Under the pieces are notes generated by a model, which did no database searches, was not told where the DNA came from, and saw only the letters and a program-made list of their open reading frames with translations. Made by a program: the position numbers and the translations under genes. This document shows positions 2,153 through 63,261 of a DNA stretch of 64,000 bases, one piece after another. Location: positions 1-64,000 of the forward strand of contig CDRNVI010000028.1 of assembly GCA_977017575.1 (NCBI GenBank), given 5' to 3'. The first letter of the stretch is position 1. The number at the start of each line of letters is the position of its first letter. Origin of the DNA: Paramoeba atlantica (Eukaryota > Protista > Discosea).

Positions 2153-2956
2153 TTAATCTCCCGTATCATCCTCCACAAGCACTATGGCTGTATCTCGCAC
2201 ATCAAAGGCATGCGTACCCACCCATGAGTAGTATTCCACCGCCGGTTTGCCCCAATCCAAGGAACGTGGCAACCGAGATCGACGAACGCTGCCGCACAAC
2301 CCGGAATTGTATCGAGCAGAGAATGCCGTAAGTCTGCTCGGGAGACATTCCAACATGACTTCCCCACTAAAACGATTAGTATCCAGAAACAGGTTCCGCA
2401 AGGATAAGGGGAGTCGGGTCAAATCCAACGACCCGGTAAATTTATTCTCACCTAGATTCACATAGGTGATTTGAGAAGGGAGTTGTGTGAGGATAATTTC
2501 TCCGTGCAGGTGATTGGCATATAGATGTAAAGTTTGCAGAGTTGTGGGCAAATATTGCAGGGCTACGGTACCTTGTAGACGACGAGTACTCCATGCCATA
2601 GAGACAACATGAGGGAAGGAACGACAGTGTACACCATCCCATTGGCAAGCCGGAGTTTCTGTATTCCACGAACGATGCAGATCGTCTATTCCTCCAACCA
2701 CTCGCGTCAGATCGTACTCCTGCGGCAGAGATGCACCTCGAACTTTTCCTTTTCGAATAGATGAAACATCCGCGAATGTCAGAAGGTTGGAGACGCGAAC
2801 GCCGCGAACAATGTTTTCATCAGTTTTCATGTTCAGTGATACTACGATAGATTTACATATAAAAAACATTTCTTTTTCTATTTTAGTGCTCCCTGTCAAA
2901 GAGATGGGATTCACTGGTAAAAGTGCCAACACGCTCTGGTGGCAAGCGTGTTTCAC
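2153..2956 (-). CDS. LRR family protein (23-aa LPxxLxxLxLxxNxxxG repeats)
   Basis: GKVRGASLPQEYDL, then a WxxxxPACxWxGVxC cap and 4-5 LRRs. The true start may be downstream of 2956. Confidence 0.85.
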   Translation of the reverse strand: MKHACHQSVLALLPVNPISLTGSTKIEKEMFFICKSIVVSLNMKTDENIVRGVRVSNLLTFADVSSIRKGKVRGASLPQEYDLTRVVGGIDDLHRSWNTETPACQWDGVHCRSFPHVVSMAWSTRRLQGTVALQYLPTTLQTLHLYANHLHGEIILTQLPSQITYVNLGENKFTGSLDLTRLPLSLRNLFLDTNRFSGEVMLECLPSRLTAFSARYNSGLCGSVRRSRLPRSLDWGKPAVEYYSWVGTHAFDVRDTAIVLVEDDTGD

Positions 2957-3151
2957 GTTTCTTTTGAAAACTTTTTAAAAAAGAGATTGTACCGAAGAAA
3001 AAACGAAACAATATTTCTGTAGAGCACTAAAGTAGTATGTGAAATTTGAAAACATATTTACAATGTTAGCTATTCCGAACCTTAGGCTGTCAGTTATTTC
3101 CAAACTTATTGAGTTCAGTGTAAGATGTATGTCATCGTTTTTCGTACTTAG

Positions 3152-4222
3152 TTAATTATTGTCCTCCACCGCACTCTCTGCTCCGTGCGGAAGCAAGTGT
3201 TGCAATAGAGTGACTGTTTGCTGATTTACTCTCGCACGTAAAAGACGCATATTGTTTTGAAGCAGAAAATCATTTTCAGGACTGCGAGTGACATTAAGTA
3301 GTCCATTCGTAGAAGCGCAGCCTTCTTTTTCTAGTGTAGCTTGAGTTTCCATATCATTAAACTGTTCGTGAGGCCCAGTATTACTCAAGACTTGGATGTT
3401 GTGTTCGAAAGAATACATTTTTGTTTCGTCGACTAGAGCATCTTGCCTTAAAGACGTTTTCACTTCCAAAGAAGACTGCGGCGTGTCGTCTTCCGTTAAA
3501 AAACTCTGTTGAACACATATTTTGGGCAACGGAAAAAATATTCTAGGAATTTCATTCGTTGCAGAAAAATGACCTCGCACCATAGACTTGCCTGTTCTAT
3601 TGCCTGGCATTATTCCGTCTTCCGGAGCGGTGTTGGTCAATAGATTCTCTATACAAATCTGGGGTGTTTTTTGCGAAAGAGAACTTTTAATGTATGGGGT
3701 TGATTTTTCTTGAGATTTAAGAAAGCAATTCGCTACTAAAATATCGCCACACAATGTGTGGAAAAGTGTTCCTTGGTTCGAGTGATGTATATAATCTTTG
3801 AGTATTGCAGATTGTTGACGAAGTGTACCTTGAAAATCCTCGCAGAGCATTTTAAAAATACTCTCTTTATCAATACTTCGAAGAAGTGGTTCTGCTTCTG
3901 CTTCGTACGCGGCTATCTTTCCTTGCCTTTTCTCTAAAGTGGCGTCAAGACGAGTTCTTAACACATTGTTCTTGTTCTGCATAATCTGGAGGCGTGCTTC
4001 TCGATCTTCCTTGAGAAGAGAAAGCGTTTCCTGAAGACGCGTAACCTTTCGATCGGATTTGATACTTCCTTCCATCGCATTGTTGACGCGACCCCATATC
4101 TCTTCGTACATGCCTAAAATTCTCTGAAAGAATGGCTCCATAATTAAAACAATTCTTCGTAGTTGGATTTGTTCATTGACAGAAAAAATATTTTTTTTGT
4201 TCCTAAAACTAAGAATGAACAC
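3152..4222 (-). CDS. Hypothetical protein with N-terminal coiled coil
   Basis: 356-aa ORF on the gene-bearing strand with a heptad-like segment (RKVTRLQETLSLLKEDREARLQIMQNKNNVLRTRLDATLEK). Likely start MEPFFQ at 4141. Confidence 0.55.
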   Translation of the reverse strand: MFILSFRNKKNIFSVNEQIQLRRIVLIMEPFFQRILGMYEEIWGRVNNAMEGSIKSDRKVTRLQETLSLLKEDREARLQIMQNKNNVLRTRLDATLEKRQGKIAAYEAEAEPLLRSIDKESIFKMLCEDFQGTLRQQSAILKDYIHHSNQGTLFHTLCGDILVANCFLKSQEKSTPYIKSSLSQKTPQICIENLLTNTAPEDGIMPGNRTGKSMVRGHFSATNEIPRIFFPLPKICVQQSFLTEDDTPQSSLEVKTSLRQDALVDETKMYSFEHNIQVLSNTGPHEQFNDMETQATLEKEGCASTNGLLNVTRSPENDFLLQNNMRLLRARVNQQTVTLLQHLLPHGAESAVEDNN

Positions 4223-4697
4223 CGATCATTCAATTGCGATTCAAAAGAGCTAACCATTCCTAGATTGTATTTACTAAAGCGGTCCACGTACGTAGAGCTA
4301 AATATGCAGCTCGCAAAAAATACTATTGCAAACTAAGAATGCTTTTTTTATTAATAGAATTGCGCTTCTTTTCCAATGGGTGGTCAAGGTGGCCTAGGGG
4401 AAAAATTGTTTCCAATCATCCTTCATTACAGTTGACCACCTCAGCACCTTGCCATTCGCAGACAAAGCCAGTTATAAGCACCGACAGGATATAAATCAAG
4501 TGTTCGGATCGTTCCCGACCCTTTCGAGAACCTCTCGCTGGCCAAATAAACCATTGCGTCCTCAGTCCCGGCAGTACATCTTCAACAAATCAACAATAAG
4601 TTCTCCCGTCTCTGGCAGCAAGCCCTGGCCAACCGTGCGGAGTGCTTAATGCGGGCAGAGGAATGGAAAGTGGGATGCGCATGAGGTATTTCATCGC

Positions 4698-5830: not shown

Positions 5831-6559
5831 TTATTTTTCCAATATTTCAGTTCCTTTCCAGTCATACTGTTTAAGGGATGATATCACGCTTTCTGAAACG
5901 ACACCCCTAACCTTAGGATTATTTTGTATAAATAAGCCATTGAGAGTTGTAGGAAATCGCGAAAAATCAATTTCTGTATCAAAATCGTTTCCATCCAAAT
6001 ATAAAAAATCGAGCTTTTCTGGAATACTATCGAAATTCAATGATCCAGTGCATCTGTTATTCGAAATGCCAAAGAAATATAGCTCGGGTGGAAGATTAGT
6101 GAGATCAATGTCAGATGAAAAACGATTGTCCGAGAGGTCAATCATTTTTAACAGAGGGGGCAGAGCATGAAGAGTAACAGATCCAGAAAGCATGTTTGCG
6201 CTCACATCAAATCGATCTAGTCCCGAAGGGAGACAAGTCAGATCAAGTGACCCTTCTAGTTGATTGGAGGAGACATCTAAGTCATTTAAATACGACGGCA
6301 AATATTCCCAGCGCGCCTCCCCGGAAATTCGACGTTCAAACCACTTAATTTTGATAATACGCTCGTCTTTGTCACATTTTACTCCACTCCAACTACAAGC
6401 CGTTGTGCTTGTATTCCAAGAGTTATGTAGATTAAGCATGCTGCGCGTAAACTGTGCGAGTTCATACTCTTGCGGCATTCCTACTCCTCGTGTCTTTCCA
6501 GGACGAGAAATGCAAGAGCGATTCATAGGTAAAATAATTTTTCGCTGATTCAAGTACAC
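5831..6559 (-). CDS. LRR family protein
   Basis: GKTRGVGMPQEYEL, Cys cap, about 6 LRRs. Confidence 0.85.
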   Translation of the reverse strand: MYLNQRKIILPMNRSCISRPGKTRGVGMPQEYELAQFTRSMLNLHNSWNTSTTACSWSGVKCDKDERIIKIKWFERRISGEARWEYLPSYLNDLDVSSNQLEGSLDLTCLPSGLDRFDVSANMLSGSVTLHALPPLLKMIDLSDNRFSSDIDLTNLPPELYFFGISNNRCTGSLNFDSIPEKLDFLYLDGNDFDTEIDFSRFPTTLNGLFIQNNPKVRGVVSESVISSLKQYDWKGTEILEK

Positions 6560-8174: not shown

Positions 8175-9648
8175 TTACTTCCACTTACCTTCATCGTTCC
8201 ACAAGATACCATCACTCACTGAAATTTTCGTACCGCGAACGTCATATCTTAAATATTCCAAATTCCCTCCCACGACCAGCTTTCCTTCTAGCTCCATATT
8301 CCACGATAGATACAAAAGATTTAGCGATGATGGAAGAGAATCTAGAACTACATGACCTTCAAAATAATTATTGGCAATGTGAAGTTCACACAAATTTTGC
8401 GGCAAATGACGAAAGTCAGGGTGGCCGGTGAATCGGTTCATGCAAAGTTGTTTGTTCATACAGGGCAGTACCTGTAGAGATAATTAGGTCGAGCAGGGGT
8501 AAGCGCAATCAACGTTCCCTGCTGGACCTTTTCGCCTTCCGAGGCAACACAGGGAAAAGCGCGGGATATCCTCCCCAGGAAAGCGAAAAGAGAAGGCCTC
8601 ATCGGGATAAGATGTCCCGAGATGTTTTGTAAGCGCAGTGCGCCAGGAAAAATATACGGATTTGTGGGACGCGGATGATATTCCCATCGTACATGCTACA
8701 AATGACTTCCATGGTTCATGATACAACATGGTCAGGGCCATGGATGCATGCTGGCAAATGGAGTCATGGTTCATGAAGCATCATGGGTATCGGGGTCCCA
8801 CAGAATCCGCCACGGCTGGTGAGCAAGAGAGGTGCATAGAACATCCTCTAGAACACGCATACAACGTGTTTGCTCGCCGTGTGGGAGACTTACGGTATGT
8901 GGAAGCCTCCTACGCGCAGAAGTACCGGTGTCGCCGGATAGTGAAGGCACGCCGCGTGGTCCCGTAGTAGGGTCCTGCAGCGCATGGGGACTCGGAACCG
9001 TGTTCCGAGCGGGGTGCTGGGAGATGAGGGAAGGGAGGCGCACCCCTACTTTGCGACAAGAGGGACAGTTCCTCTCCTAGCGCCATCCGGAAACGGGCAT
9101 TGACATTGTAAAAATATGCCCGTTTCCGGGAGAGAAAAGATGAGCTAGGAAAAAAAAGTACCAACAAGGTAAAGAGCGGTCAACTCAGCGGGTAAATTAT
9201 TAAAAGAAACTTCTCCCGACAGTTCGTTTCGATGAACAATAAGCACTTTTAATTCGCTGGATAAATGATCACAATTAAAAACCCCACGGAGATCCATAGA
9301 ATCCCAACTAATATCAATCACCTTTCCTGCTTCATTACATTTTACACCACGCCATTCACATGCGGGTGTACCTGAGCTCCACGTAGCATGAGGATTTTCA
9401 ATGCCATTTACAAGTTGCATCAACTGGTACTCTGTTGGTAAAGAAAGTGCGCCGACTTTGGCAGGACGTGAGACGCCCGACACCGAATCTGTCGCACGAT
9501 ACAAAAACCTCATGGATAGATAAATAAGAAATGTGCAAGGAAAGAGTTTTTTATCTACTACTGAACCACAGTTTTTTAACACGTGATTTAACCACGTCAA
9601 AGCTCCAAGAAAATAGTTGGGAGTAAATACCGGGGGGACAGTTGACAT
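8175..9648 (-). pseudogene. LRR family gene split by a ~680-bp insertion
   Basis: The N-half (9167-9648) has AKVGALSLPTEYQL, the cap and 2 LRRs. The C-half (8175-8487) resumes at LQVLPCMNKQLCMNRFTG. Confidence 0.75.
8487..9167 (+). mobile_element. GC-richer insertion, possibly a tyrosine-recombinase (DIRS-type) remnant
   Basis: Interrupts an LRR gene. Translations include VFARRVGDLRYV (RxxD/E-like) and SAWGLGTVFRAGCW (IxxxGxW-like). Perfect 14-bp stem at 9087-9129. Confidence 0.3.
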
Positions 9649-9786
9649 AACGATTTTTGGGGCCCAAAATAATTTTTTGTGACTTTTTTTTATAATATAC
9701 GAAATTTTTCTTTCGGTGTGGGACTGCTTCCTTTCTGGTCTACGATGCTCTTAGGCCCGGAACCATACACGTTTTCTCTTCTCAGT

Positions 9787-10746
9787 TCAACTTAAGTTCA
9801 AGAGGCTATTTTCTTCATTTAAATTGATGTACGTGATATTAGTTTCAGCGAAACAATAGAAATACATGTATGATACCTTTTCTAAATCCACCTCACCGGT
9901 GAGTTTCGAGTTGTTTGAAACGTTAAGGATCAGCAGAGATTCGGGAAGTGATTTGGAAGTTATCCATCCTTCTAGATCGTTGTCATTCAGGTACAGAGTT
10001 TTCAAATACTTTGGACATGATAATGAACCAAGGTGAATCTCTCCATTGAAGTGATTGTGATCAACGTGAAGCTCGACTAGATTACTTGGAAGTTCTGTCA
10101 AAGTCACCTCGCCGTAAAATTCGTTGTAGGAGAGGTGAATTTCTTCTAGTGAGTTGGGAAGCGAGTCCCACTTCACATCTCCACTTAACACATTTCCATT
10201 CAAGTATAAAGTTACCAAATAGGGAGGAAGGGAAGAAAAGTCTACAACACCCGAAAAATCGTTTTCCTCTAGACGCAAGTGATTCAGCGTATCTGGAAAA
10301 TGAGCGAGATCGGGAGTTCCTTCCAGTTCATTATACGATACCGTAAATTTCTCCAAACCTGGAGGTAACGCCTCGACAACTACGGTGCCACTCAGATAAT
10401 TTTCTTTGAGGTGTATTTCTGTAATTGTCTGTGGCAAGTGACCCCAGAGTAAGGGTCCTTTCAGTGCATATTTACTCCAATTAATTTCATCAATCACGCC
10501 GTCGTAACACACAACTCCGGGCCACTTATCGATGGGTACAGAACTATTCCATTCGGGCAATGGATTCTCCAGACGCGAGATGACTTGCTGCATGGCGAAC
10601 TCAGGGGGTACATTTACGGCTTGAATTCGACCAAGTCGAGTTTTGGTAGATCCCGGTGGAGTTTCCAACTTTTGAACTTCCGTTTGTGATTCCATGCATC
10701 GCTTTTTTTGTGGAGGACTGCTGTCAACAGCTAGAAAAATAAGCAT
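9787..10746 (-). CDS. LRR family protein
   Basis: LGRIQAVNVPPEFAM, WPGVVC cap, about 8 LRRs. Confidence 0.9.
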   Translation of the reverse strand: MLIFLAVDSSPPQKKRCMESQTEVQKLETPPGSTKTRLGRIQAVNVPPEFAMQQVISRLENPLPEWNSSVPIDKWPGVVCYDGVIDEINWSKYALKGPLLWGHLPQTITEIHLKENYLSGTVVVEALPPGLEKFTVSYNELEGTPDLAHFPDTLNHLRLEENDFSGVVDFSSLPPYLVTLYLNGNVLSGDVKWDSLPNSLEEIHLSYNEFYGEVTLTELPSNLVELHVDHNHFNGEIHLGSLSCPKYLKTLYLNDNDLEGWITSKSLPESLLILNVSNNSKLTGEVDLEKVSYMYFYCFAETNITYINLNEENSLLNLS

Positions 10747-10989: not shown

Positions 10990-11901
10990 CTACTCAACCA
11001 CTACGTGAACTCCTGTATTTGCGACTGAAAACTGCAAGTTCAGGTACCGAGAGGGTGCAATCTCGCCTGTGATTCTCTCATTGTCCGATACATCAAGCCA
11101 GCGCAACGTAAAGGGGAGACGTCGAAAGTCAACGACACCACAAAAGTCATTATTACGCAAAGACAACCCCAGGAGATTTTGCGGGAGCTGACTTAGAGAT
11201 ATCTCACCTGAAAGCAAGTTGTCCCGTAAACCAAGTTGTTTCATACTCTGAGGCAGAGAAGTCAAATCGACCGATCCCGTAAGATTATTGGAGGAAAGAT
11301 ACAACCCCTCCAGAGCTGGAGAAAGTCGCGTCAAACACACGCCTTCTGTAAACGAATTGTCGTAAATATCCAGTTCTGCCAGCTTCTGCGGGAGCGAGGT
11401 AAGATCCAATGCGCCCACAAATCGGTTCTCACTGAGGCAAATATAACGCAAGGATGAGGGCAAGTCGAGGAGATCGATTTCACCCGTCAGCGCGTTTCGC
11501 CCCACGTTGAACCGTTTCATCGTTTGCATGAAATGAGACAAATGGAGTGAGCCGTGGAGGTCGCGGCCTGTCCAGCGGATACGCGTGACGACGTCGCCCT
11601 GGCTGCAGCCGACACCGTCCCACTCGCAGGCTGGAGTTTTCGCATCCCATGTCTCGTGCGGATTTAAAATATCACGTACAAGACGTACGAGTTCATATTC
11701 TTGAGGTAAATTGGCCATGCTTACCTTTGCCCCACGCGATCGGGTGCTTGGAGGGATCTGTACGGTAGCATCGTCGGGAAGGGAAACGTTAAACTTTCGG
11801 CGCTTCTTCAAAGGAGACTCTGTGGGATCATGAGAAGAAAGCATTTTCAACTCAAGAAGAGCAAGGAAACCCATATGACAATTTTGTATTAGTAGCAACA
11901 A
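10990..11901 (-). CDS. LRR family protein
   Basis: AKVSMANLPQEYEL, cap, about 7 LRRs. Basic KKRRK (NLS-like) segment in the N-terminal extension. Confidence 0.9.
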   Translation of the reverse strand: MLLLIQNCHMGFLALLELKMLSSHDPTESPLKKRRKFNVSLPDDATVQIPPSTRSRGAKVSMANLPQEYELVRLVRDILNPHETWDAKTPACEWDGVGCSQGDVVTRIRWTGRDLHGSLHLSHFMQTMKRFNVGRNALTGEIDLLDLPSSLRYICLSENRFVGALDLTSLPQKLAELDIYDNSFTEGVCLTRLSPALEGLYLSSNNLTGSVDLTSLPQSMKQLGLRDNLLSGEISLSQLPQNLLGLSLRNNDFCGVVDFRRLPFTLRWLDVSDNERITGEIAPSRYLNLQFSVANTGVHVVVE

Positions 11902-17410: not shown

Positions 17411-17413
17411 CCT

Positions 17414-20187: not shown

Positions 20188-20325
20188 CCTCTTCAGCATG
20201 TTTTTTTAATGAAGTGAAAACAGAATAAAAACAGAAGGGAGAGGGTGGGAAGTTGTGACGTGCTATGGCATGCCTGGGACCTAGGGCTTGGTCCCGGTAA
20301 CATGGTGCTTACGAAGGAGTGATAA

Positions 20326-37435: not shown

Positions 37436-38218
37436 TCAATCTACGATAGGATGCTGCGCTCCAACATATACGAAATTCGGTACGGGGTCTGGTGTTATTT
37501 GAGCCAGGCAGTTCCATGATAGATTCAACTCCAGAATATTGGGCGGCAAATTTACGAGTTGTACCGCTCCCCCGAATCGATTTCGGTCCAGTCGTATTTC
37601 TTGAATTCCGTGAGGCAAGGAGAGAAATTCTAACGGGCCACTGAGAAGATTTGAGCCCACATCCAGGCGGCGCAACGTTTTGGGAAGAGAGGCAATATTT
37701 AGCCCTCCACGAAATCGATTCCGCGCGAGTTGTAGCGATTCAAGTTGAGGGGGCAACAAACTAAGACACAATTCTCCTTCCATGCGGTTATGAAACAAAT
37801 TAAGTGTGCTCATCTCTGCGGGTAGTGAGCACAGCGAAATGGGACCTGAAAAAAGATTCGTAGAGAGCACAAGACGAAAGAGTGAAGGGGGGAGTTTATC
37901 AAGCCGTGCCGCACCTTCTATCTCGTTTTGCATCACATCCAGAAAAGTTAGGGTGTGGGGCAACAGGTCAAACCGCAGAACCCCTCGGAGACTCAAAAAA
38001 GACCAATCAATGCGCGTGACTTGACGATCTGTGTTACAGGTAATACCCAGCCAGGAACAGACTTCATTGTGTGCACTCCAGGATGGATGAGTTTGGGTGA
38101 GATTTTGAACGAGGAAATGTAAATTGTATTCTTGCGGGTGAGGCACGCCGCGCACCTTCCCTGGTTTGCTTTGTGAAGGATCCGCTGCCAGGACAGTGTT
38201 AAATATGCGAATCATCAT
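37436..38218 (-). CDS. LRR family protein
   Basis: AADPSQSKPGKVRGVPHPQEYNL, cap, about 7 LRRs. Confidence 0.9.
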   Translation of the reverse strand: MMIRIFNTVLAADPSQSKPGKVRGVPHPQEYNLHFLVQNLTQTHPSWSAHNEVCSWLGITCNTDRQVTRIDWSFLSLRGVLRFDLLPHTLTFLDVMQNEIEGAARLDKLPPSLFRLVLSTNLFSGPISLCSLPAEMSTLNLFHNRMEGELCLSLLPPQLESLQLARNRFRGGLNIASLPKTLRRLDVGSNLLSGPLEFLSLPHGIQEIRLDRNRFGGAVQLVNLPPNILELNLSWNCLAQITPDPVPNFVYVGAQHPIVD

Positions 38219-38704
38219 TACGTGAGCTCAAGAAAAAGAAATTTATGGTTAAAAATCAAAGTTCAAAATCACGTTGTATACAGTATGCTGCATGCGAGTG
38301 TTGCGTGCGAAATATAAAATGTGTTTTTCATTATTTTTTAATTTATTGTTTCCCCCCATACCCCCATGTGACAAAACAAGTCTAGTGGTAAGTAACAAAT
38401 ACTAATCCTAGCCATATGCCAATGTGTATTTTCTTTGGAATTATAGCAAGAAGTTTAAAGTCGTAGAAAAATTTACATTGGCTTTATTTCACATCAGGAA
38501 GCAATCACCGCTAATTTCCGCAGACTTCAGCTTATGAGTAAGTAGAAAAGTACTACCCACAATGATACTTGGTGGAAGCTTACTTGGATCATAAATTCCA
38601 AGGTCTTAATTATAGTCCAGATAAAGAATTGAGAGACGTTGCGGAAGAACATCGAAATGTAAAGTGCGCCGGAGTTTATTCCTAGTGAAATGCGGCCCGG
38701 TTTA

Positions 38705-39834: not shown

Positions 39835-39839
39835 TATAC

Positions 39840-39985: not shown

Positions 39986-40188
39986 GTTTGCAACTCATCC
40001 TTTCGTACAGAAAAGTTCATCTACATTTGTGCATTGTACTGAGATAAGACACGGAAGGCAGAGCAATGAAATACTAATAAATCACGCTAAAGAAAATATG
40101 CCATACCCCCTCGTTTACGAGTTTTTGGATTTACTTGGTAAACGAACGGAAAACAACTGATTCATTGATATGGACAAATGGCCGAAAT

Positions 40189-40620
40189 CTAAGGTCCCGA
40201 AAAACCCATGTCCGGAGGCAATCCAGTGTCATTTTTCCATTTCCGGAGGCAATCCAGTGTCAGTGGTAGTACCACTAGAGGAACCTCACCAGCAAGATCG
40301 TGATTTTCAAAAGGCCCCAAATAGACTAGGGCAGAAAGCAAATGCTCCCACCTTGGGAGTCCCCGTAAGCCGATCCCAGTACCCATTCCATAACCAAATT
40401 CAGAGTGTAATGCATCTGCCATATTGCTCCAATTGATAGTTTTCTCATTTCTTTCTTCCTCCCAGTCTACTCCATACTACCTACATGTCTACTCCTACAT
40501 GTCTACCACTACATCCTATTAAAAGTGTCTATCCGCGGTAAAGAGATATTTTGGATAAATAGGATTAGCGAGCATTTGGGTGGAAGATGTGCACTAACCC
40601 TTCCAAGGCGGCTTGCACAG
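40189..40620 (-). pseudogene. LRR family pseudogene
   Basis: SRLGRVSAHLPPKCSLILFIQN, a stop, then INWSNM...GLRGLPRWEHLLSALVYL...DLAGEVPLVVLP. Confidence 0.65.
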
Positions 40621-40799
40621 TAAATTTTTCCCCAAAAAAGGGGCAAAAAAATTGCACCTTAAACTTGACAGTGGTTTAGTAAACAATGGAAATTTGTGAG
40701 GTTAACGTACATGTGAGGATTTCGTAAAAAACGAATTTAGAGGGAACTGTAGGGCAAATGAATCATCACAATAAAAAGATGAACATGAAATAAGCAGCA

Positions 40800-41447
40800 T
40801 TACATCACGCGGCACATTCGTCGCTGCTCTATTTTTGTACTTCGAATACTAAACATGTTCATTGAGAAAAGCTTGGGAGGCAATTTTTCTGGATCGTAGA
40901 CTCCGCGCAAATTCATGTTAAAACTTAAAGACAGTTCCTCAAGACCGCTCGGTAGATTCCCAAGACCAACAACATTTCGAAACAAATTATGAGTAAGTGC
41001 AATCTTTCGCATTGCTCGGGGTACAAGAGTGAAATCGAGTGTCCCGTGTAAGTTGTTCGCAGAAAGACGCAACACTTCCAGTTCTGTTGGCAACAAATCA
41101 AGTGGGAGTTCACCAGACAGGCAATTATTATACATGAGAAGTGATGTGAGCGTAGGAGGCAAGTGTTCCCATTGCAGAGGCCCCTTCAAACCTTTTGCAG
41201 CGACCCCACACTGTTCCCCCATACTTGCCCATTTAATCGCAGTCACATAATGATCGGCATCGCAAGTCACCCCATACCACTTGCAAGCTGCTATGTCAGT
41301 GGAGTTGAAATTTTCAATCAATACTGGCTTCATTTTTTCTAAAACTTTGACGAGAGCAAATTCCTGGGGAAGGGCCGCACCCACCCTTCCAAGTCGACAA
41401 GGTGTAACGTCAGAGCTATGCAGAGATGCCAAATATACTAAATACAT
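40800..41447 (-). CDS. LRR family protein
   Basis: RLGRVGAALPQEFAL, ACKWYGVTC cap, 4 LRRs. Confidence 0.85.
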   Translation of the reverse strand: MYLVYLASLHSSDVTPCRLGRVGAALPQEFALVKVLEKMKPVLIENFNSTDIAACKWYGVTCDADHYVTAIKWASMGEQCGVAAKGLKGPLQWEHLPPTLTSLLMYNNCLSGELPLDLLPTELEVLRLSANNLHGTLDFTLVPRAMRKIALTHNLFRNVVGLGNLPSGLEELSLSFNMNLRGVYDPEKLPPKLFSMNMFSIRSTKIEQRRMCRVM

Positions 41448-49394: not shown

Positions 49395-50001
49395 TCAGTA
49401 TTTACGTATGCCTGTTCCAGCGACGCTCAAGCTTCCGGATTGCAACCCCCAAGGTAACGTTGACACGAATACATTGCCCGAGAGCCCTACATTCCGAGAC
49501 AAGTAAACACAAGTTAAATTCGGCGGTAAATTTGCGAAATACACAGGACCTGAAAGATTATTATCACCAACAAAAAGTCGCTCCATTGTTTTTGGAGCGT
49601 CCTCAAGGTAACTAATGCTTCCGGAAAATTGGTTTGTTCCCGCACTGAAGTACTTCAACTTGCGAGGTACACTGTATGTCTTTGAGAACAATGCTACCTG
49701 ATAACCTGTTCGCATCGAGACGCAGCTCAAGAAGACTTTCCGGCAGACTTTTCCAATCAAGAGTTCCCTGTAGTTTTCTCGATGCCCAGTCGATACTTGT
49801 TACTTCTCCGTCCTCATTGCAGCTCACGCCATCCCACTGACACGCAGGAGTGTGTGATTCCCACGAGGGATGTAGAATAGACACGTTCTGAAGAAACAGT
49901 AAAAGTCGATATTCTTGCGACGTTGCAGCACTTACGCGACCCAACCGTGCAGAGGTGTAACTTGGGTCTGCGGCAAACAATCCCAGGCAATAATCATACA
50001 T
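49395..50001 (-). pseudogene. LRR family gene with a one-base frameshift
   Basis: AADPSYTSARLGRVSAATSQEYRL in ORF 49612..50001. LRRs continue in ORF 49395..49760, with the shift near 49680. Confidence 0.8.
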
Positions 50002-50256
50002 TGGTACCAGTGGCTATGAAATAATAAAAAAATATTCCAAAAAAGGAGGTACAAGGTTAATTAAGACTTCTGCATGAGTGTGTATGGGAAATCATTCAAA
50101 TCAGTGATCTCTAAACATGTAGCGAACCGCACTAAGAATAATAGTTCGATAGCTCGTAGGCGTAGTTTGTTAAGAGTAAGCGAAACTTTTAAAGGAGGCT
50201 GGGGCTATAAGACAAGTGCGATTTCCGAAGGAACACAATCTACCCGGACCAACGTT

Positions 50257-50865
50257 TCAGGAATTCGTACAAACAAGCATTGTTTCATGCGTACTGAGAC
50301 ACAATACGGGCGAAAGCTTTGCGACATTGACGTGCCCTTGGAGCTCTTTATTGCAACTTAAGTCAAGTAGTGTCAACTTTAGCGGTATTTTTTGAAGATT
50401 TACGTGACCAGAAAAACGATTCCGAGAAAGATCCAGATCTCTCAACGACTGCGGTAATAGATTTAAATTTAACGACCCCGTAAATCGATTTAGACTTAAA
50501 TTTAAACAGGACAACTTGGGAGGGAGTTCCTCGAGTTGGATCTCTCCACCCAATTGGTTCATGGACAAATCCACATGAATAAGCGAGCGAGGGAGCGCGG
50601 ACAAATTTACTGTCCCCTTCAGCGCAAGGTTTAACCAGATAAGAGATCTCACCTGATTACTTTGAAAGCAAATTACACCATTCCATTTTCCGGGGGAGTT
50701 GTGGATATTCCACGAGGGAGGAGTGTTTCCCATGTCTTGTACAAGCTTCTCGAGTTCATATTCCTGGGGTAAATTCGAGTGGTGCACTTTGGAGGCACGT
50801 GAAGGTGATGATGATGCGTCACTTGAAGAAGCTCTGGAGATGCCACCTAGAGATGAACATGGCAT
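50257..50865 (-). CDS. LRR family protein
   Basis: SKVHHSNLPQEYEL, WNGVIC cap, 4-5 LRRs. Confidence 0.85.
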   Translation of the reverse strand: MPCSSLGGISRASSSDASSSPSRASKVHHSNLPQEYELEKLVQDMGNTPPSWNIHNSPGKWNGVICFQSNQVRSLIWLNLALKGTVNLSALPRSLIHVDLSMNQLGGEIQLEELPPKLSCLNLSLNRFTGSLNLNLLPQSLRDLDLSRNRFSGHVNLQKIPLKLTLLDLSCNKELQGHVNVAKLSPVLCLSTHETMLVCTNS

Positions 50866-54870: not shown

Positions 54871-56090
54871 GGTGAAAGTCAAGCATTATTTCACAAAAAA
54901 AAACTTTTTTGTTGATGTTCTCATTTGATCATATTTTACTTACAAAGTGTTTTTTAGGATATTTTTCGCATATTTCTGCACCATTCTCGATGGATTACTC
55001 GTTTTGCCCCAATTTCCAATGTACAGACAGTATTAGCTATAGTGTGCTCGCCCGCGCCCCCGAAAATGATATTGTCGAGTGGTTGAAAGGCCACAAACTT
55101 GTTTTCCAGAGCGTCAGCTGTAGCAAGCGGCATGAAACTCGCATTTGCTTGCGGAAAGGCGATCATTGGGTCTGCCCCGATCGTTTGTGTCGGAGTCGTA
55201 CATACCACATGGAGCCACTCTTAGGTTCCTTCGGTCGCCGAACACCAAGCCAAATTCTTCAAGTTCTATATGGTATGGCGAACGGCAATGGTCGTGATCA
55301 ACTGACTCTGGAAACACTTTTAAGTAGTCAAACTGTCACAGAATTGACAAAAAAGTTGGAACGTATTGTTGCTTCCGTTTATGAAATGCGAACTGCGGCT
55401 GCACGAGGAACTGTTACTATCATGCAGAAGGACGAAACTTGCTTTTCTAAGCCAAAAAGGGGGGGTAATAACCGACCAGCCCGCATTCGCCAAGGGGGAT
55501 CAACCTGGGCAAACGTCCTGACACAGACCTCTCGTTCTCGGAAAGCTGAGCAGATATTTGTAAGCACGCTGGAAGACCGCCGTAGTTCCTCGACTAATGA
55601 CCCTGTGTTTGAACTGGCCGCAAGCGAACGTACCATTGTTCACACGGATGGATGGAGAGGCAGCAATGCCTTGGGCAACAGACTCAACCATGGAACAGTA
55701 AACCATCGCCGTCACTGGGTTGATCCTGTCACCGGGGTGCACACTCAGACTGCTGAGCGCATGAACGGGATGTTGAAAAAAGAAGTCCGCATACGGGGCA
55801 ACGGCACACTTGGTAGTGGAGTAGAAGCGCGAGACAACCGGCTGAAGTTCGCCGGAGAAGTTGTAAACGGCAAGCTGAAAAGAGGAGAACAAGACGGTCA
55901 TGCCCTCCGTCGCCTGTTTCAAGACGTGAAGTGGTATTGCGAGAACGTGGAAATCGTTCTAGAATAAGTTTAAGCTAGCGTTTAAGATAACTCGAAGAGA
56001 GGTTTAAGGTGCTATAAATTTTATAAAAGTCAATATGACCAGTCAATATGAGATTTTTCTGAAAGTGTGAAATAATGCTTGACTTTGACC
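54871..56090 (+). mobile_element. Apparently intact Merlin DNA transposon
   Basis: 8-bp TSD GCAGTTGG (54863-54870, 56091-56098). 25-bp TIR ggt(g/c)aaagtcaagcattatttcaca with one mismatch. Single uninterrupted ORF. Confidence 0.95.
54990..55967 (+). CDS. Merlin/ISXO2-like DDE transposase
   Basis: N-terminal Cys/His zinc-finger region, KDET (D), HTDGW (D), VNH..WVDPVTGVHTQTAE (E). The ORF is open from 54909. Confidence 0.92.
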   Translation: MDYSFCPNFQCTDSISYSVLARAPENDIVEWLKGHKLVFQSVSCSKRHETRICLRKGDHWVCPDRLCRSRTYHMEPLLGSFGRRTPSQILQVLYGMANGNGRDQLTLETLLSSQTVTELTKKLERIVASVYEMRTAAARGTVTIMQKDETCFSKPKRGGNNRPARIRQGGSTWANVLTQTSRSRKAEQIFVSTLEDRRSSSTNDPVFELAASERTIVHTDGWRGSNALGNRLNHGTVNHRRHWVDPVTGVHTQTAERMNGMLKKEVRIRGNGTLGSGVEARDNRLKFAGEVVNGKLKRGEQDGHALRRLFQDVKWYCENVEIVLE

Positions 56091-56188
56091 GCAGTTGGTT
56101 CCACAGAGGAACCAACTTGCGGGAGGGATGCCCCACGCACCCGAGCCGCTTTAGGCATATTATCCGCCGCATCTAAGAAAAAAGCCAT
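56091..56188 (-). pseudogene. LRR family N-terminal remnant at the Merlin insertion site
   Basis: MAFFLDAADNMPKAARVRGASLPQ. Only traces (CDLERTSLPK) remain on the far side of the Merlin. Confidence 0.65.
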
Positions 56189-56512
56189 TATGATAGTAGC
56201 CTTGAAAACAACAAAAAATGCGATGATTTGGATCACGATGATTCATTATGAGACTCCCTTTTAAGCCTTGATTGTGAGAACACACATGTATTCATGTGTC
56301 ACATACAGATGCATTCACGTGACACGCCGCATTACTAATGTCATTAGTAAGGTCTATCATTAGGATAGAAAAAAACCAGTTTGGGTTGTGAAAATCCCCG
56401 AAAAGTTATCAAAAAGAAATTCATGCCATGGTTACCCCGCTTCATTTCATTTAATATCTTCCGTTTCTATTCCTGAGGGGGGAATATTATGACGCAGACT
56501 GTATGTGCAAGC

Positions 56513-57145
56513 TCAATCCAACACTGTAATTTTTGTGTTCGTAAAGGTCTTGTATCTTATGCTTATCGGCAACAAATGCAAGTGTACTGTACCAGTAAGT
56601 TCGACGTTGTTGCGCAATGAAAGACTTACGATTACAGAAGGAAGATTGGTAAACGTTACGTGGCCATATAACTCATTCTCCGAGAGTATCAACGCATTTA
56701 GTGTCACTGGAAGGTTGCAAAGATCAACGTTACCAGTAAAACGATTGTACGAAGCGTTTAACGAGCTGAGTTTTGGGGGGAGATTTTCCAGTTCAATGTC
56801 TCCACTGAGTTTGTTACTATACACCGATAATCGAGTTAGCGATCGCGGGAGTGTACTCCATGAAAGTGTCCCGCGCAATAATTTGCTCTCAGCTTCAAAT
56901 TTTAGTATGGCGTCCCCGGAACAGATAACTCCTTTCCACTTGTGTGCAGGTACAGATGCATTCCAAGAGGGAAGAGGATTCTCTATGTTACTTACCATGC
57001 GTTCAAGATCGTACTCTAGAGGCAGTTGCATACCTCTTATTTTTCCAGCTTTCGTAATTTTACTAGTTGTGTCGGAGCAGTCAAGTATCTTAGGGTACTT
57101 ATGACCATACAGCAACTGCAAATCACACATGAGGATACGACACAC
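56513..57145 (-). CDS. LRR family protein
   Basis: GKIRGMQLPLEYDL, WKGVIC cap, 4-5 LRRs. Confidence 0.85.
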   Translation of the reverse strand: MCRILMCDLQLLYGHKYPKILDCSDTTSKITKAGKIRGMQLPLEYDLERMVSNIENPLPSWNASVPAHKWKGVICSGDAILKFEAESKLLRGTLSWSTLPRSLTRLSVYSNKLSGDIELENLPPKLSSLNASYNRFTGNVDLCNLPVTLNALILSENELYGHVTFTNLPSVIVSLSLRNNVELTGTVHLHLLPISIRYKTFTNTKITVLD

Positions 57146-61191: not shown

Positions 61192-61669
61192 TTTTAGTAT
61201 TCTTGTTCAGAAAAGCATTGAAAAGTAGAAAATATCAGCCTGCAGTAGCAGAATATCATTGAACGCAAAAATCCACCCAGTGGTGGAAATCGAGTAGACG
61301 TAATAAGAAAACGCCAATAACCTACAGTACAAATTAGATTTATATTTTTCCGCTACTGTCCTAACACTACGAAAAACTTACTACGAAAAAGAATAAAATC
61401 AAAAGCTCTCTCCATGATTTCAAACCCTTTATAACAGTTTTTCTGATTAGGGGTGTAGGATCATCTTGAGCATCGAAAGTTTATGAGAGTACAATTTGGT
61501 GTGCCGCTGCGCCTCAAAAAGAGCCACTAAACTTGAGCTCCGAACCGGTAAGGTAACTGATCGATCGATCGCATTTGAATTCTGTCATACTGAGGGACAG
61601 AATAAAACGTATGACTAATTTTGGACTGTACAAAATTTAAAGTCAATCAAAAAGAATTGCTTTTGACAG

Positions 61670-61933
61670 TTATGTCATGATATTCTCATACCACCTTCGC
61701 AGTTGAGTACACTGTTCTTCAAGCTTCTTCAGTGTTTTAGCGTATTTCTCACACTCCTTTGTCAAGCTTTCTTTTTCGAGTTCATAAAGTCCTATTATTT
61801 TCTGTATTTGCGAACGATCGCCTTTTCCGGCTGCACTGCGAAACTGCTCGAAAAGTTCAACGTCGCGTTGAAGTTCGTTTACCACACGCCCCTGGTCATC
61901 GCGGGCCGATGTCGGAGGTGTCAACGTATCCAT
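61670..61933 (-). CDS. Small coiled-coil hypothetical protein
   Basis: 87 aa, heptads LELEKESLTKECEKYAKTLKKLEEQCTQLRR. Confidence 0.4.
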   Translation of the reverse strand: MDTLTPPTSARDDQGRVVNELQRDVELFEQFRSAAGKGDRSQIQKIIGLYELEKESLTKECEKYAKTLKKLEEQCTQLRRWYENIMT

Positions 61934-62421
61934 AAAATTTTAAATGTACCTTCGAAAAACGTGTACAGAATCACGTGTCCTATAAAAAGCCACAACTGCA
62001 TACACGATTTTTACACTAGAAAATCAAGAATAGAGCAGTCCTCGTGCAATGGGGTTCTATAAGTGCACTCTTTCCCAGAAACGTACAATAACATGTAACA
62101 TTTATACATATTTTTGTACCAGGTGAATGTAGTACAAAGTGAATGTACACCAATGTAATGTAAATTTACAGCTAATTTATACTGCTAATTTATACAATAT
62201 CCAAAATCGATTAACTTAATGTTCGAAAAGGATCAGGAAAATGAAATAGTATAGCAAGTTACTATGTTTAAAGTAACTTCTTAAAATAACAGCATTTTTT
62301 ACACCCCCCCCTTAAACCCTTCGCCAGCAAAACAAGCATTATCATACAGCAAAAATCCTGTATTACGGCAAATATAATATAATATTATACATTTGTATAA
62401 ACAGTAAAAAGCATCATCATA

Positions 62422-63261
62422 TTAGAGGGTAATGCTCAGCGCTAGAGTGTGATCGATATCAAGAGGATTGCCTTCAGAGGCGAGTTCGTCATTGTCGTGC
62501 ATCCACAAGACTTCCAAGCTTTCTGGAAGATTATCAAGCCTTGCTAACCCAGTGAAGTGATTGTTGTTAAGGTACAGTGCTTTCAGCGTCGCGGGCAACC
62601 GGCGCAGCTGAACTGGTCCAGTAAACAAATTTCGCGATAGATTGAGACAGGTCATGCCGCTAGGCAAACTAACAAGATCGACATGCCCGGATAACTTATT
62701 GCTACTAAGAGTTAACGCTAACAAGCTCTGAGACAACTGCGTCAAGTCCACACCATCTTGAAAATTATTGTAATCCACCCAAACCTTCTCTAATGTGTTT
62801 GGCAAAAATTGTAAATCCAAACCGCCCGAAAATTGATTTAGAACCAAATTTAAAACACGTAATTTCGAAGGAAGCGTCTTGAGAGGGACATTTCCAGACA
62901 ATTTCTGTTTTGCGACATCAACCACTAAGATTTTCTGGGGGAGCCACTCCCATTGAATGGACCCGGATAGGCTATTCAGCTCGGCAACATTTTCCCAATC
63001 AATCTTAGTGACATGTAGGCCATCCTCACAAGTTACACCTTTCCATTCACACGCCGGTGTCGATACGTTCCATGTAGGGTGTGGATTTTCTACTAATTCA
63101 ACAAACCGTGCGAGCTCGTATTCCTGAGGTAAATTCGAACCTCCCACCCTTCCTATTCGAACATTGTGCTTGCCTTCTTCATTTCCCTCGTTGTGCGAAT
63201 TTCGCGGGGCGTGCGGCTTCTGAGCGTCGGAGAGGGACATCGCAAGTATTGTTATGCTCAT
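62422..63261 (-). CDS. LRR family protein
   Basis: IGRVGGSNLPQEYEL, cap, about 7 LRRs. Confidence 0.9.
   Translation of the reverse strand: MSITILAMSLSDAQKPHAPRNSHNEGNEEGKHNVRIGRVGGSNLPQEYELARFVELVENPHPTWNVSTPACEWKGVTCEDGLHVTKIDWENVAELNSLSGSIQWEWLPQKILVVDVAKQKLSGNVPLKTLPSKLRVLNLVLNQFSGGLDLQFLPNTLEKVWVDYNNFQDGVDLTQLSQSLLALTLSSNKLSGHVDLVSLPSGMTCLNLSRNLFTGPVQLRRLPATLKALYLNNNHFTGLARLDNLPESLEVLWMHDNDELASEGNPLDIDHTLALSITL

What the first reader, a model, noticed from the sequence alone, without database searches (positions are those of the whole stretch)
2153..63261. 17 loci of one small LRR family sharing a conserved N-terminal tag: candidate diversified effector or receptor repertoire
Seen: 12 open and 5 disrupted loci in 64 kb, all co-oriented and intronless, 200-320 aa, with 4-8 repeats of 23 aa and no obvious signal peptide or TM segment. 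A variable leader carries a recurring bipartite motif, hydrophobic-(A/S)(A/V)D-x(3-9)-G[KR][VI]xx-x-LPQEYxL, before a plant-like WxxxxPACxWxGVxC cap. Exposed xxLxLxxN positions differ widely between paralogues. Established: such positions form the LRR binding surface. Inference: a birth-and-death binding repertoire whose conserved tag acts as a sorting, export or partner-docking signal. I recall similar ADPS..GRV LRRs from Perkinsela-like endosymbionts but cannot verify this.
Basis: partly seen in the sequence, partly recalled or inferred. Interest (0 to 1): 0.75.

Follow-up and report, generated by a model that had tools for sequence, protein, structure and literature searches.

The report
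Perkinsela small LRR gene family
This stretch of the genome of Perkinsela, a trypanosome relative that lives inside Paramoeba amoebae, carries 12 intact and 4-5 decayed genes of a very large family of small leucine-rich-repeat binding proteins first noted in 2017; half of the conserved 'tag' is simply the cap of the protein fold, and the short leader in front of it is real but still unexplained.

Summary
The window has 12 open and 4-5 disrupted loci of one LRR family. All are on the minus strand, show no introns, and encode 202-319 aa with strictly 23-residue repeats.

The window is ENA ERZ24900291 ctg3997l. That contig also carries a kinetoplastid-type fused DHFR-TS, and exact protein matches lie in Paramoeba atlantica transcriptomes. 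It is therefore a Perkinsela-like endosymbiont genome.

The family is already on record. Tanifuji et al. 2017 (Suppl. Note 1.4) report 462+ 'leucine-rich proteins', significance unclear. The passages I could read there do not describe the tag.

The tag splits into three parts:
- LPQEYxL is the N-cap helix of a plant-type LRR fold (two AlphaFold models; Z 26 to plant receptor ectodomains, aligned from that residue on).
- G[KR][VI] sits just before the fold. Its basic residue is present in 73 of 73 members and is unexplained.
- The hydrophobic-x-Asp leader lies where plant homologues have a signal peptide. It is usually too short to be one, and some members lack it.

About 13% of members carry a PPxKRRK NLS-like cassette.

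Concave-face positions are the most variable. Recent evolution is purifying: pN/pS 0.11 between strains, and dN/dS 0.42 in a young tandem pair.

My favoured reading, which is unproven, is a standing repertoire of host-facing binding proteins.

The parts
62422..63261 (-). Open LRR gene, 279 aa (first AlphaFold model)
   Evidence: on ctg3997l
56513..57130 (-). Open LRR gene, 205 aa, short form (about 4 repeats); first cap Cys replaced
50257..50865 (-). Open LRR gene, 202 aa, short form; weak leader
49398..50013 (-). Disrupted copy: the N-terminal piece (49615-50013) and the next repeats (49398-49799) are in different frames
40800..41447 (-). Open LRR gene, 215 aa, compact leader
   Evidence: strain differences 5 synonymous, 2 nonsynonymous
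40118..40658 (-). Decayed pseudogene in three pieces and different frames (tag, cap, first repeats)
38609..38701 (-). One-repeat relic
   Evidence: E 0.002
37436..38218 (-). Open LRR gene, 260 aa, short leader; covered by a probable RNA contig; second AlphaFold model
   Evidence: (X1 contig 37381-38196, 0 differences)
38180..38218 (-). Leader of 37436-38218: Met, hydrophobic stretch, A-A-D (residues 1-13)
   Evidence: residues 1-20 have mean pLDDT 63-69 and no secondary structure
38147..38161 (-). G-K-V-R-G element (residues 20-24), just N-terminal of the shared fold
   Evidence: basic residue 73/73; residue block 21-30 mean pLDDT about 81; most structural alignments start at residue 27-28
38120..38140 (-). 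(L/H)PQEYxL element (residues 27-33), the start of the N-cap helix
   Evidence: (helix 29-36)
38036..38080 (-). Cap strand WxxxxxxCxWxGhxC (residues 47-61), LRRNT_2-like
37481..37963 (-). Seven 23-residue repeats LPxxLxxLxLxxNxFxGxhxLxx (residues 86-246)
36113..36895 (-). Open LRR gene, 260 aa, divergent tag (SKIRGAEMSYELM)
   Evidence: strain differences 8 synonymous, 2 nonsynonymous
29776..30633 (-). Open LRR gene, 285 aa
14280..14975 (-). Open LRR gene, 231 aa; first cap Cys replaced
10990..11874 (-). Open LRR gene, 294 aa, with the NLS-like cassette
   Evidence: P0064 is a near-identical strain variant
11794..11820 (-). NLS-like cassette E-S-P-L-K-K-R-R-K (residues 19-27 of 10990-11874)
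9787..10746 (-). Open LRR gene, 319 aa, degenerate basic cassette (PPQKKR)
8178..9750 (-). Disrupted copy: N-terminal part 9148-9750 and C-terminal part 8178-8483, split by an insertion of about 690 bp (about 8480-9160) that carries a perfect hairpin; middle repeats missing
5831..6526 (-). Open LRR gene, 231 aa, no hydrophobic leader
2153..2869 (-). Open LRR gene, 238 aa, short form with a long leader
56033..56242 (-). Marginal tag-region relic (weak)
   Evidence: E 0.6

Best explanation
These loci belong to the lineage-specific small LRR protein family of Perkinsela, the kinetoplastid endosymbiont of Paramoeba.

Architecture (shown). Each gene encodes one soluble domain of 22-35 kDa, a plant-type LRR solenoid:
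- an N-cap made of the LPQEYxL helix and the CxWxGVxC strand;
- four to eight 23-residue repeats, LPxxLxxLxLxxNxFxGxhxLxx;
- a small C-cap.

The 'tag' (shown) is composite:
- Its C-terminal half is the cap helix.
- G[KR][VI](R)G is a strictly conserved element at the boundary of the fold.
- The part in front is a short, variable leader: Met, 5-20 mostly hydrophobic residues, a small residue, then Asp. The leader occupies the place that the signal peptide has in plant homologues.
- A minority of members carry a PPxKRRK basic cassette in the leader.

Evolution (shown). Paralogues are old. They differ most on the concave beta-face, and each is kept by purifying selection. This is a standing repertoire of different binding specificities, not a fast arms-race family.

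Where they act (inferred). I favour delivery through the secretory route to the Perkinsela surface or into the amoeba cytosol, at about 45-50%. The published genome paper raises secretion of Perkinsela proteins into the host cytoplasm as a hypothesis, and from my own knowledge no symbiosome membrane separates symbiont and host. On this reading the proteins act as adaptors or decoys for host proteins, and the cassette-bearing subset goes on to the host nucleus.
For: Identity:
- The window lies on ENA ERZ24900291 ctg3997l. That contig carries a fused DHFR-TS whose best PDB match is the T. cruzi enzyme, and the match extends into the DHFR half.
- Exact or near-exact family members occur in the Paramoeba atlantica and P. 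aestuarina transcriptomes.
- The 2017 Perkinsela genome paper reports 462+ such proteins. The sequences it prints share the repeat type and the compact leader.

Fold:
- Two AlphaFold models have mean pLDDT 87 and 92.
- Foldseek and VIA-align top hits are all plant LRR ectodomains: Z 26.5, 1.8 A over 229 residues, model range starting at residue 27-28.
- Pfam LRRNT_2 matches 35 of 73 members.

Tag conservation.

Repertoire:
- Concave x positions have entropy 3.53 against 3.12 for other x positions (p 2e-5).
- Window neighbours are not each other's nearest relatives on the tree.

Selection: 14 synonymous against 5 nonsynonymous strain differences, pN/pS 0.11. The young tandem pair has dN/dS 0.42.

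Expression: transcript contig L002 for P0006; probable RNA contig over 37436-38218; further MMETSP transcripts.

Host-facing inference:
- The fold is of the extracellular type, and both cap cysteines are kept in 59 of 73 members.
- Some members have full-length signal-peptide-like N-termini that end at the same small-residue|Asp junction (P0027, P0002, P0076, P0086).
- N at repeat position 9 is associated with S/T at position 11 (OR 2.7, p 0.001).
- The genome paper itself proposes secretion into the host cytoplasm as a hypothesis.
Against: - No window copy has a canonical signal peptide. Many leaders have only 5-9 residues before the Asp, and about 7 of 79 members have none.
- For the one family member with a full entry in the 2017 supplementary targeting table (c3259AC), all prediction columns are negative and it is listed as 'cytosol'.
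- The total N-glycosylation sequon count is at chance, 177 against 187 +/- 12.
- The first cap cysteine is lost in about a fifth of members.
- An NLS-like cassette also fits a protein that stays inside Perkinsela.
- No spliced-leader junction was seen, so the start codons rest on ORF structure and on one transcript contig that spans the ATG.
- No localisation or interaction data exist.
Confidence: 0.5

Rival explanations
1. Dedicated export tag. The hydrophobic-x-D plus G[KR][VI] elements form a lineage-specific sorting or processing signal, in the way PEXEL or RxLR motifs do, that marks the whole family for export from Perkinsela into the amoeba. Processing would occur at the G[KR][VI] boundary.
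For: - G[KR][VI] is as conserved as core residues (basic in 73/73).
- Most structural alignments start after it, at residue 27-28. It keeps its position across two deeply diverged subfamilies and in the published species.
- It sits exactly at the domain boundary, where a propeptide cut would leave an intact fold.
Against: - The LPQEYxL half is part of the fold.
- The spacing does not fit PEXEL (RxLxE/Q/D) or PTS2.
- The distance between the leader Asp and G[KR][VI] varies from 1 to about 60 residues, and some members lack the leader.
- GKVRG lies in a residue block with mean pLDDT about 81 in the deeper model, which fits packing on the cap rather than a free linear motif.
- No protease or receptor is known.
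Confidence: 0.2
2. Intracellular adaptors. The proteins stay inside Perkinsela (cytosol, or nucleus for the PPxKRRK subset) and serve as interchangeable protein-binding modules in its own cell biology. The leader is a non-cleaved N-terminal extension.
For: - The targeting prediction columns are negative and the protein is called 'cytosol' in the 2017 table, for the one member with a full entry.
- Leaders are short or missing.
- There is an NLS-like cassette.
- Sequon count is at chance.
- There is no TM segment, and by my reading of the C-termini no hydrophobic tail of the GPI-signal kind.
Against: - The fold type and the conserved cysteine pair are those of extracellular LRR domains.
- It is hard to see why a reduced genome of about 5,000 genes would keep hundreds of diversified internal adaptors under purifying selection.
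- From general knowledge, the largest lineage-specific families of intracellular eukaryotes are usually host-exposed.
Confidence: 0.25
3. Largely neutral expansion. The family's size reflects duplication and turnover, possibly driven by retroelements that target LRR codons, and most copies have no individual function.
For: - 4-5 of 17 loci in the window are decayed.
- One copy is split by a hairpin-bearing insertion.
- Earlier notes of this scan report retroelements that land in LRR codons.
Against: - The three genes tested show strong purifying selection, including two with no RNA contig.
- Paralogues are old yet keep open frames and intact caps.
- Several copies are transcribed.
Confidence: 0.05

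Closest known systems
Perkinsela sp. CCAP 1560/4 'leucine-rich proteins' (Tanifuji et al. 2017, Sci Rep 7:11688, Supplementary Note 1.4; PMC5601477)
   Same: - Same kind of organism.
- Hundreds of small paralogues, many with RNA-seq support.
- Same 23-residue repeat.
- The printed sequences carry the compact leader (hydrophobic-x-D-x-S-L-G-R-[LV]-D ... L-[SP]-Q-[QE]-A-L-M-E), which matches the sister subfamily found here.
   Different: - The window comes from another Perkinsela lineage, most likely that of Paramoeba atlantica.
- It is dominated by the GKVRG..LPQEYEL subfamily, with longer linkers and a PPxKRRK cassette.
- The passages of the 2017 note that I retrieved do not mention the leader, the cap, the fold class or selection.
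Plant LRR receptor ectodomains and PGIP (LRRNT_2 cap plus plant-specific LRR), e.g. ERL1 5xjx, PSKR 4z63, FLS2 4mn8, PGIP 1ogq
   Same: - Same fold including the N-cap helix and the Cys-containing strand: Z 22-26, rmsd 1.8-2.4 A over about 229 residues.
- NxFSG-type repeat core.
- LRRNT_2 matches.
   Different: - Repeats are 23 residues, not 24. They start with LP and lack the 'IP' of the plant consensus.
- No TM or kinase domain and no C-cap cysteines.
- The canonical signal peptide is replaced by a short leader.
- Sequence identity is only 20-25%.
Host-targeting motifs of eukaryotic intracellular parasites (Plasmodium PEXEL RxLxE/Q/D, oomycete RxLR) - from general knowledge
   Same: A short conserved N-terminal element shared by a large, otherwise diversified family in an intracellular eukaryote.
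   Different: - Those motifs follow a bona fide signal peptide and lie in disordered regions.
- Here half of the motif is a folded helix, the spacing does not match, and the signal peptide is doubtful.
Expanded LRR or other large families of intracellular eukaryotes (Leishmania PSA/GP46 LRR surface antigens; microsporidian LRR and Nematocida large gene families) - from general knowledge, not tested here
   Same: Lineage-specific expansion of small repeat or binding proteins in an intracellular eukaryote. PSA is also a kinetoplastid LRR family.
   Different: No sequence relationship was tested. PSA proteins are reported to be GPI-anchored or secreted with clear signal peptides, and the Perkinsela proteins lack both features.
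Bodonins of Bodo saltans
   Same: A large lineage-specific family in an early-branching kinetoplastid.
   Different: The 2017 authors found no BLAST similarity. Not re-tested here.

Membership tests
Perkinsela leucine-rich protein family (Tanifuji 2017, Suppl. Note 1.4) | Encoded in the nuclear genome of a Perkinsela-type kinetoplastid endosymbiont of Paramoeba | tested here: met
   The window is on ctg3997l. The same contig has a fused DHFR-TS closest to the T. cruzi enzyme. Genes are co-oriented and show no introns. Exact matches occur in the P. atlantica transcriptome.
Perkinsela leucine-rich protein family (Tanifuji 2017, Suppl. Note 1.4) | Hundreds of small leucine-rich paralogues, some in clusters, with widely varying similarity | tested here: met
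   There are 12 open plus 4-5 decayed loci in 64 kb and three more elsewhere on the contig. Dozens of clusters below 50% identity carry the tag. The genome-wide count was not made.
Perkinsela leucine-rich protein family (Tanifuji 2017, Suppl. Note 1.4) | Same repeat and N-terminal region as the published sequences | tested here: met
   This was checked by inspecting the sequences printed in the supplement (c3259AC, c3160AC) against P0177, P0179 and P0181, which fall in one profile and tree with the window copies.
Perkinsela leucine-rich protein family (Tanifuji 2017, Suppl. Note 1.4) | Transcribed | tested here: met
   L002 transcript contig; X1 contig over 37436-38218 (that X1 is RNA is the tool's guess); MMETSP entries. 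In the one 5.6-kb stretch laid, one of three open window copies had RNA contig support.
Plant-specific LRR with LRRNT_2 cap | LRRNT_2 N-cap: helix followed by a CxWxGVxC strand | tested here: met
   Pfam LRRNT_2 matches 35/73 members, at scores near the cut-off and only over model positions 22-41. The helix and strand superpose on plant caps.
Plant-specific LRR with LRRNT_2 cap | 24-residue repeat LxxLxLxxNxLSGxIPxxLGxLxx | tested here: not met
   The period is exactly 23 in all members. The consensus is LPxxLxxLxLxxNxFxGxhxLxx, with no IP.
Plant-specific LRR with LRRNT_2 cap | N-terminal signal peptide (extracellular protein) | tested here: inconclusive
   Some members have long hydrophobic N-termini. 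Most leaders are too short and about 9% of members have none. The published prediction columns are negative for the one member listed in full. No predictor was available here.
PEXEL / RxLR-type host-targeting motif | Linear motif in a disordered region downstream of a signal peptide, not part of the folded domain | tested here: not met
   LPQEYxL is the N-cap helix. For G[KR][VI] alone the test is inconclusive.
PEXEL / RxLR-type host-targeting motif | Sequence pattern RxLxE/Q/D or RxLR | tested here: not met
   The conserved pattern is [KR][VI]x(3-5)LPxE, with Leu 5-6 residues after the conserved basic residue.
PTS2 glycosomal signal | [RK][LVI]x5[HQ][LA] near the N-terminus | tested here: not met
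   The spacing varies (x5 or x6), and the residue after Q is E in 57/73, not L or A.
Classical monopartite NLS (for the cassette only) | Basic cluster K-[KR]-x-[KR], often preceded by Pro | tested here: met
   A strict pattern is present in 10 of 79 members, including 10990-11874. Whether it works as an NLS cannot be tested with these tools.
Bodonin (Bodo saltans) | Sequence similarity to bodonins | not tested
   The 2017 authors report no significant BLAST hits.

The most novel reading that the evidence does not exclude
The short hydrophobic-x-Asp leader together with the invariant G[KR][VI] boundary element is a new kind of export and processing signal. On this reading a eukaryotic endosymbiont delivers hundreds of diversified LRR binders, about 9% of its genes, into its host's cytosol. 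The PPxKRRK subset is then imported into the host nucleus, next to which the symbiont sits. That would be a eukaryote-to-eukaryote effector system with its own targeting code.
Probability: 0.15. Interest if true: 0.8.

Novelty: new member of a known kind. Interest (0 to 1): 0.38.

Why it matters
Perkinsela in Paramoeba is a rare case of a non-photosynthetic eukaryote living permanently inside another eukaryote, and how the partners communicate is unknown. The 2017 supplement counts 462 such proteins, and from my recollection of that paper the genome has about 5,250 genes, so the family would be roughly 9% of them. The authors left its role 'unclear'.

This work gives three things:
- a fold class: a plant-type LRR solenoid with an N-cap;
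- a dissection of the conserved N-terminus into a structural part and a non-structural part;
- evidence that individual copies are kept by purifying selection.

This turns a curiosity into testable hypotheses: leader-reporter fusions, N-terminomics and fractionation proteomics. If the proteins reach the host, they would be the first candidate effectors of a eukaryotic endosymbiont. As it stands, the family itself is not new and the function is still inferred.

Tried and rejected
1. The hydrophobic-(A/S)xD element as a translated polypyrimidine tract plus AG acceptor. Rejected: several copies have no AG there, both Asp codons are used, and there is no downstream Met before the fold.
2. G[KR]V as a 5' splice site (AAG|GTRNG). 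Rejected: K/R and V/I use many codons, and the frame runs on into the cap.
3. PTS2 and PEXEL readings. The spacing and key residues do not fit.
4. Leader as a beta-hairpin folded on the cap. The deeper AlphaFold model shows no secondary structure in residues 1-28.
5. Mapping spliced-leader sites. The only RNA-like data are assembled contigs. L002 is colinear with the genome for 53 nt upstream of the ATG with no leader. The X1 contig stops 22 nt inside the ORF, at a polymorphic site. Starts are therefore not fixed by RNA.
6. Site-wise dN/dS among window paralogues. Not attempted: at 30-45% protein identity, synonymous sites should be saturated (my judgement). I used strain differences, one young pair and column entropy instead.
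7. Giant multi-stretch hits of the profile search. The one checked (P0021) is a metagenomic PKD+LRR protein that scores by summed repeats and is not family. The 57,078 hits are therefore not a family count.
8. P0087, the only NCBI-sourced close hit. It lies on a metagenome contig for which no DNA is served, so its origin is unresolved.
9. N-glycosylation sequon enrichment as a proxy for secretion. The total is at chance, with one modest association.
10. NLS-like members as a single clade. They are scattered on a leader-free tree, for which no branch support was examined.

Full report
**1. What is there**

I built a family profile from the open copies and scanned every stop-to-stop segment of the window in six frames. 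It finds 12 open genes, all on the minus strand, encoding 202-319 aa from the first ATG: 2153-2869, 5831-6526, 9787-10746, 10990-11874, 14280-14975, 29776-30633, 36113-36895, 37436-38218, 40800-41447, 50257-50865, 56513-57130 and 62422-63261.

It also finds decayed copies at 8178-9750, 49398-50013, 40118-40658 and 38609-38701, and marginally at 56033-56242.

The repeat period is exactly 23 residues in every member. The consensus is L-P-x-x-L-x-x-L-x-L-x-x-N-x-F/L-S/T-G-x-V/L-D-L-x-x. The other genes of the window lie on the same strand, including a ribonucleotide reductase large subunit at 51365-53908.

**2. Whose genome**

- The window protein at 62422-63261 is encoded on ENA ERZ24900291 contig ctg3997l (132,507 bp) at 64,234-66,073.
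- Another part of that contig (L001) carries three more family genes. It also carries a 460-aa thymidylate synthase fusion whose best solved relatives are the bifunctional DHFR-TS of Trypanosoma cruzi, and the match extends into the DHFR half.
- One family protein of this contig (P0006) is identical to an MMETSP transcript. Others are identical or over 90% identical to Paramoeba atlantica entries. More distant members come from P. aestuarina.
- Co-oriented genes with no introns seen, plus a kinetoplastid-type fusion gene in a Paramoeba data set, point to the Perkinsela-like endosymbiont.

**3. Already reported**

The Perkinsela sp. [quoted passage not shown] It makes these points:
- There are hundreds of hypothetical genes: 462 by BLASTP and hundreds more by tBLASTn.
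- Many are supported by RNA-seq.
- They have no similarity to Bodo bodonins.
- Their significance is 'unclear'.

Neither the main text nor the other papers I could search discuss the family further. Sequences printed in the paper's targeting table carry a compact form of the tag. One full-length example is marked negative in every prediction column and called 'cytosol'. The passages I retrieved do not describe the leader or the cap.

**4. Anatomy of the N-terminus**

Alignments of 20 and 73 members and a listing of 79 leaders show a modular head:
- (a) Met, then 5-20 mostly hydrophobic residues, ending in a small residue and Asp.
- (b) A linker of 1 to about 60 residues. In 10 of 79 members it holds a conserved (E/S)-P-P-x-K-R-R-K cassette directly after the Asp. 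Window copy 10990-11874 has it, and 9787-10746 has a degenerate version.
- (c) [RK]-x-[GS]-[KR]-[VIL]-(R)-(G), in which the central basic residue is present in 73 of 73 members.
- (d) Three to five residues later, L-P-Q-E-Y-x-L.
- (e) The W...C-x-W-x-G-V-x-C strand.

A sister subfamily has the same order in compact form: hydrophobic-[IV]-D-P-[ST]-L-G-R-[LV]-D-x-x-S-L-S-[DQ]-Q-x-x-M-E. It includes the published Perkinsela sequences and the P. aestuarina transcripts, and it forms a clade on a tree built without the leader.

About 7 of 79 members, including window copy 5831-6526, start at or after the Asp with no hydrophobic stretch.

**5. Which parts are fold**

- Two AlphaFold models are confident from the LP of LPQEY onward: 62422-63261 with 20 sequences, and 37436-38218 with 73 sequences. 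The only element before the first strand is a helix formed by Q-E-Y-x-L-x-x-F/L, at residues 46-53 and 29-36 respectively.
- Foldseek returns only plant LRR ectodomains.
- VIA-align gives Z 26.5 at 1.8 A over 229 residues for ERL1. HAESA, PSKR, FLS2 and PGIP score similarly. Nearly all alignments begin at model residue 27-28, paired with the first ordered residues of the plant ectodomains.
- LPQEYxL is therefore the N-cap helix.
- GKVRG (residues 20-24) lies just outside the shared core, in a residue block with mean pLDDT about 81.
- Residues 1-20 have no secondary structure (pLDDT 63-69).
- The leader occupies the place of the signal peptide in the plant precursors.

**6. Is the leader a signal peptide?**

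For:
- The junction small-residue|Asp resembles a cleavage site.
- A few members have long hydrophobic N-termini that end at the same junction (P0027, P0002, P0076, P0086).
- Both cap cysteines are kept in 59 of 73 members.
- N at repeat position 9 is associated with S/T at position 11 (OR 2.7, p 0.001).

Against:
- No window copy has a canonical-length signal peptide.
- In the sister subfamily only 5-9 residues precede the Asp.
- Some members lack the leader altogether.
- The published prediction columns were negative for the one full-length member listed.
- The total sequon count is at chance.

I could not run a predictor here. The question stays open.

**7. Readings that failed**

- Polypyrimidine tract plus AG acceptor, or a 5' splice site, hidden under the motifs. 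The codons vary in a way that only protein-level constraint explains.
- PTS2 and PEXEL patterns do not fit.

**8. Diversification and selection**

- Across 73 members the five concave x positions of the repeat have higher entropy than the other non-scaffold positions: 3.53 against 3.12, Mann-Whitney p 2e-5. Pairwise identity there is 0.10, close to background. This cannot separate positive from relaxed selection.
- Where rates can be measured, selection is purifying.
  - Contigs of three DNA-like runs of the same organism differ from the window at 14 synonymous and 5 nonsynonymous sites inside three LRR genes. That gives pN/pS 0.11. Only the differences listed by the tool were used, and nine further differences across the stretch laid were not shown.
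  - The one young tandem pair on the contig has dN/dS 0.42: 13 nonsynonymous against 9 synonymous differences, dS 0.045.
- On the tree, window neighbours are not each other's nearest relatives, so the array is old (supports not examined).
- The NLS-like cassette is scattered over the tree. It was either often lost or moved between 5' ends.

**9. Expression**

- A 952-nt transcript contig for P0006 is colinear with the genome from 53 nt upstream of the ATG to the 3' flank. It shows no intron and no spliced leader at its end.
- A small 2015 contig set, probably the transcriptome (RNA status is the tool's guess), covers only 37381-38196 plus the 3' flank of that gene, out of the 5.6 kb laid. It covers none of the intergenic DNA or the high-copy transposon, which looks like RNA. 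The two other open copies in the stretch have no contig there.
- Several other members are MMETSP transcripts.
- Start codons are thus supported by ORF structure and one transcript, not by mapped trans-splice sites.

**10. Limits of the family**

- The exhaustive profile search reports 57,078 hits at E up to 0.001, but these include generic LRR proteins. The one giant hit checked is a metagenomic PKD+LRR protein.
- Members that carry the cap and leader come from at least four ENA assemblies. Each time they sit in compact, co-oriented gene arrays, or they come from the Paramoeba transcriptomes.
- I saw no tagged member from a named organism outside Paramoeba holobionts among those examined. One close hit from a metagenome (P0087) is unresolved.

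**11. Verdict**

- The family is real, large, transcribed and selectively maintained, but it was already reported in 2017.
- The new points are the fold class, the split of the conserved head into a structural cap and a non-structural leader with an invariant boundary element, the NLS-like cassette, and the selection estimates.
- I favour host-facing binding proteins, at about 45-50%. This rests on the fold type, the cysteine pair, the position of the leader and the general rule for intracellular eukaryotes.
- The rivals are a dedicated export tag and purely internal adaptors. Only localisation or N-terminal proteomics can separate them.
- Earlier notes of this scan on other pieces of the same genome describe retroelements that insert in LRR codons. 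The split copy at 8178-9750 fits that picture.

Noticed in passing
window 8480-9160 (minus strand reading): An insertion of about 690 bp splits LRR copy 8178-9750 inside an LxxLxLxxN unit. It carries a perfect inverted repeat (CCGGAAACGGGCAT ... ATGCCCGTTTCCGG) near one end, and both junctions read GGTACT. The middle repeats of the gene are missing. It resembles the hairpin-ended elements that earlier notes of this scan report in LRR genes.
   Followed up: partly
window 38990-39930: A high-copy element. Contig depth in DNA-like runs is 20-30 times that of the flanks. It has a plus-strand ORF at 39335-39799 that looks to me like a transposase helix-turn-helix region (not scanned). The DNA runs also hold a form lacking about 740 bp (joints 39095 to 39836/39842), which suggests non-autonomous derivatives.
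   Followed up: partly
window 22828-24141 and 46730-47368: Two ORFs with DDE transposase domains: DDE_1 with a weak PHD-like zinc-finger match, and DDE_3 (Tc1/mariner type). A 2021 paper (PMC8101967) presents Merlin as the first DNA transposon reported in kinetoplastids, so other superfamilies in a Perkinsela genome may be worth recording.
   Followed up: no
window 17400-20200: A tandem array with a period of about 314 bp (ORF starts at 17620, 17934, 18248, 18562, 18876) and raised GC (0.52). It was already noted on this window by the first stage as a hairpin array.
   Followed up: no
family-wide; window 11794-11820 and about 10700-10720: A conserved cassette D-x-x-(E/S)-P-P-x-K-R-R-K lies directly after the leader Asp in 10 of 79 members. 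It is scattered over the domain tree, which suggests repeated loss or exchange of 5' ends between paralogues.
   Followed up: partly
L001:18186-19568 (same contig, outside the window): The DHFR-TS gene call is only 460 aa. It aligns to the T. cruzi enzyme from residue 130 of 521 onward, so the N-terminal part of the DHFR domain is either strongly diverged, shortened, or missed by the gene call.
   Followed up: no
P0022 (855 aa, ENA contig of 118 kb) and P0027 (678 aa, L005:2702-4738): Some relatives string two to four complete cap-plus-repeat modules in one ORF. P0027 also has a long, canonical-looking signal peptide that ends at the same small-residue|Asp junction.
   Followed up: no
L001:7338-8228 and L001:8544-9434: A young tandem pair of family genes (dS 0.045). 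Their 280-bp upstream regions do not align without gaps (36% ungapped identity), so the duplication unit or later turnover seems confined to the coding part.
   Followed up: partly
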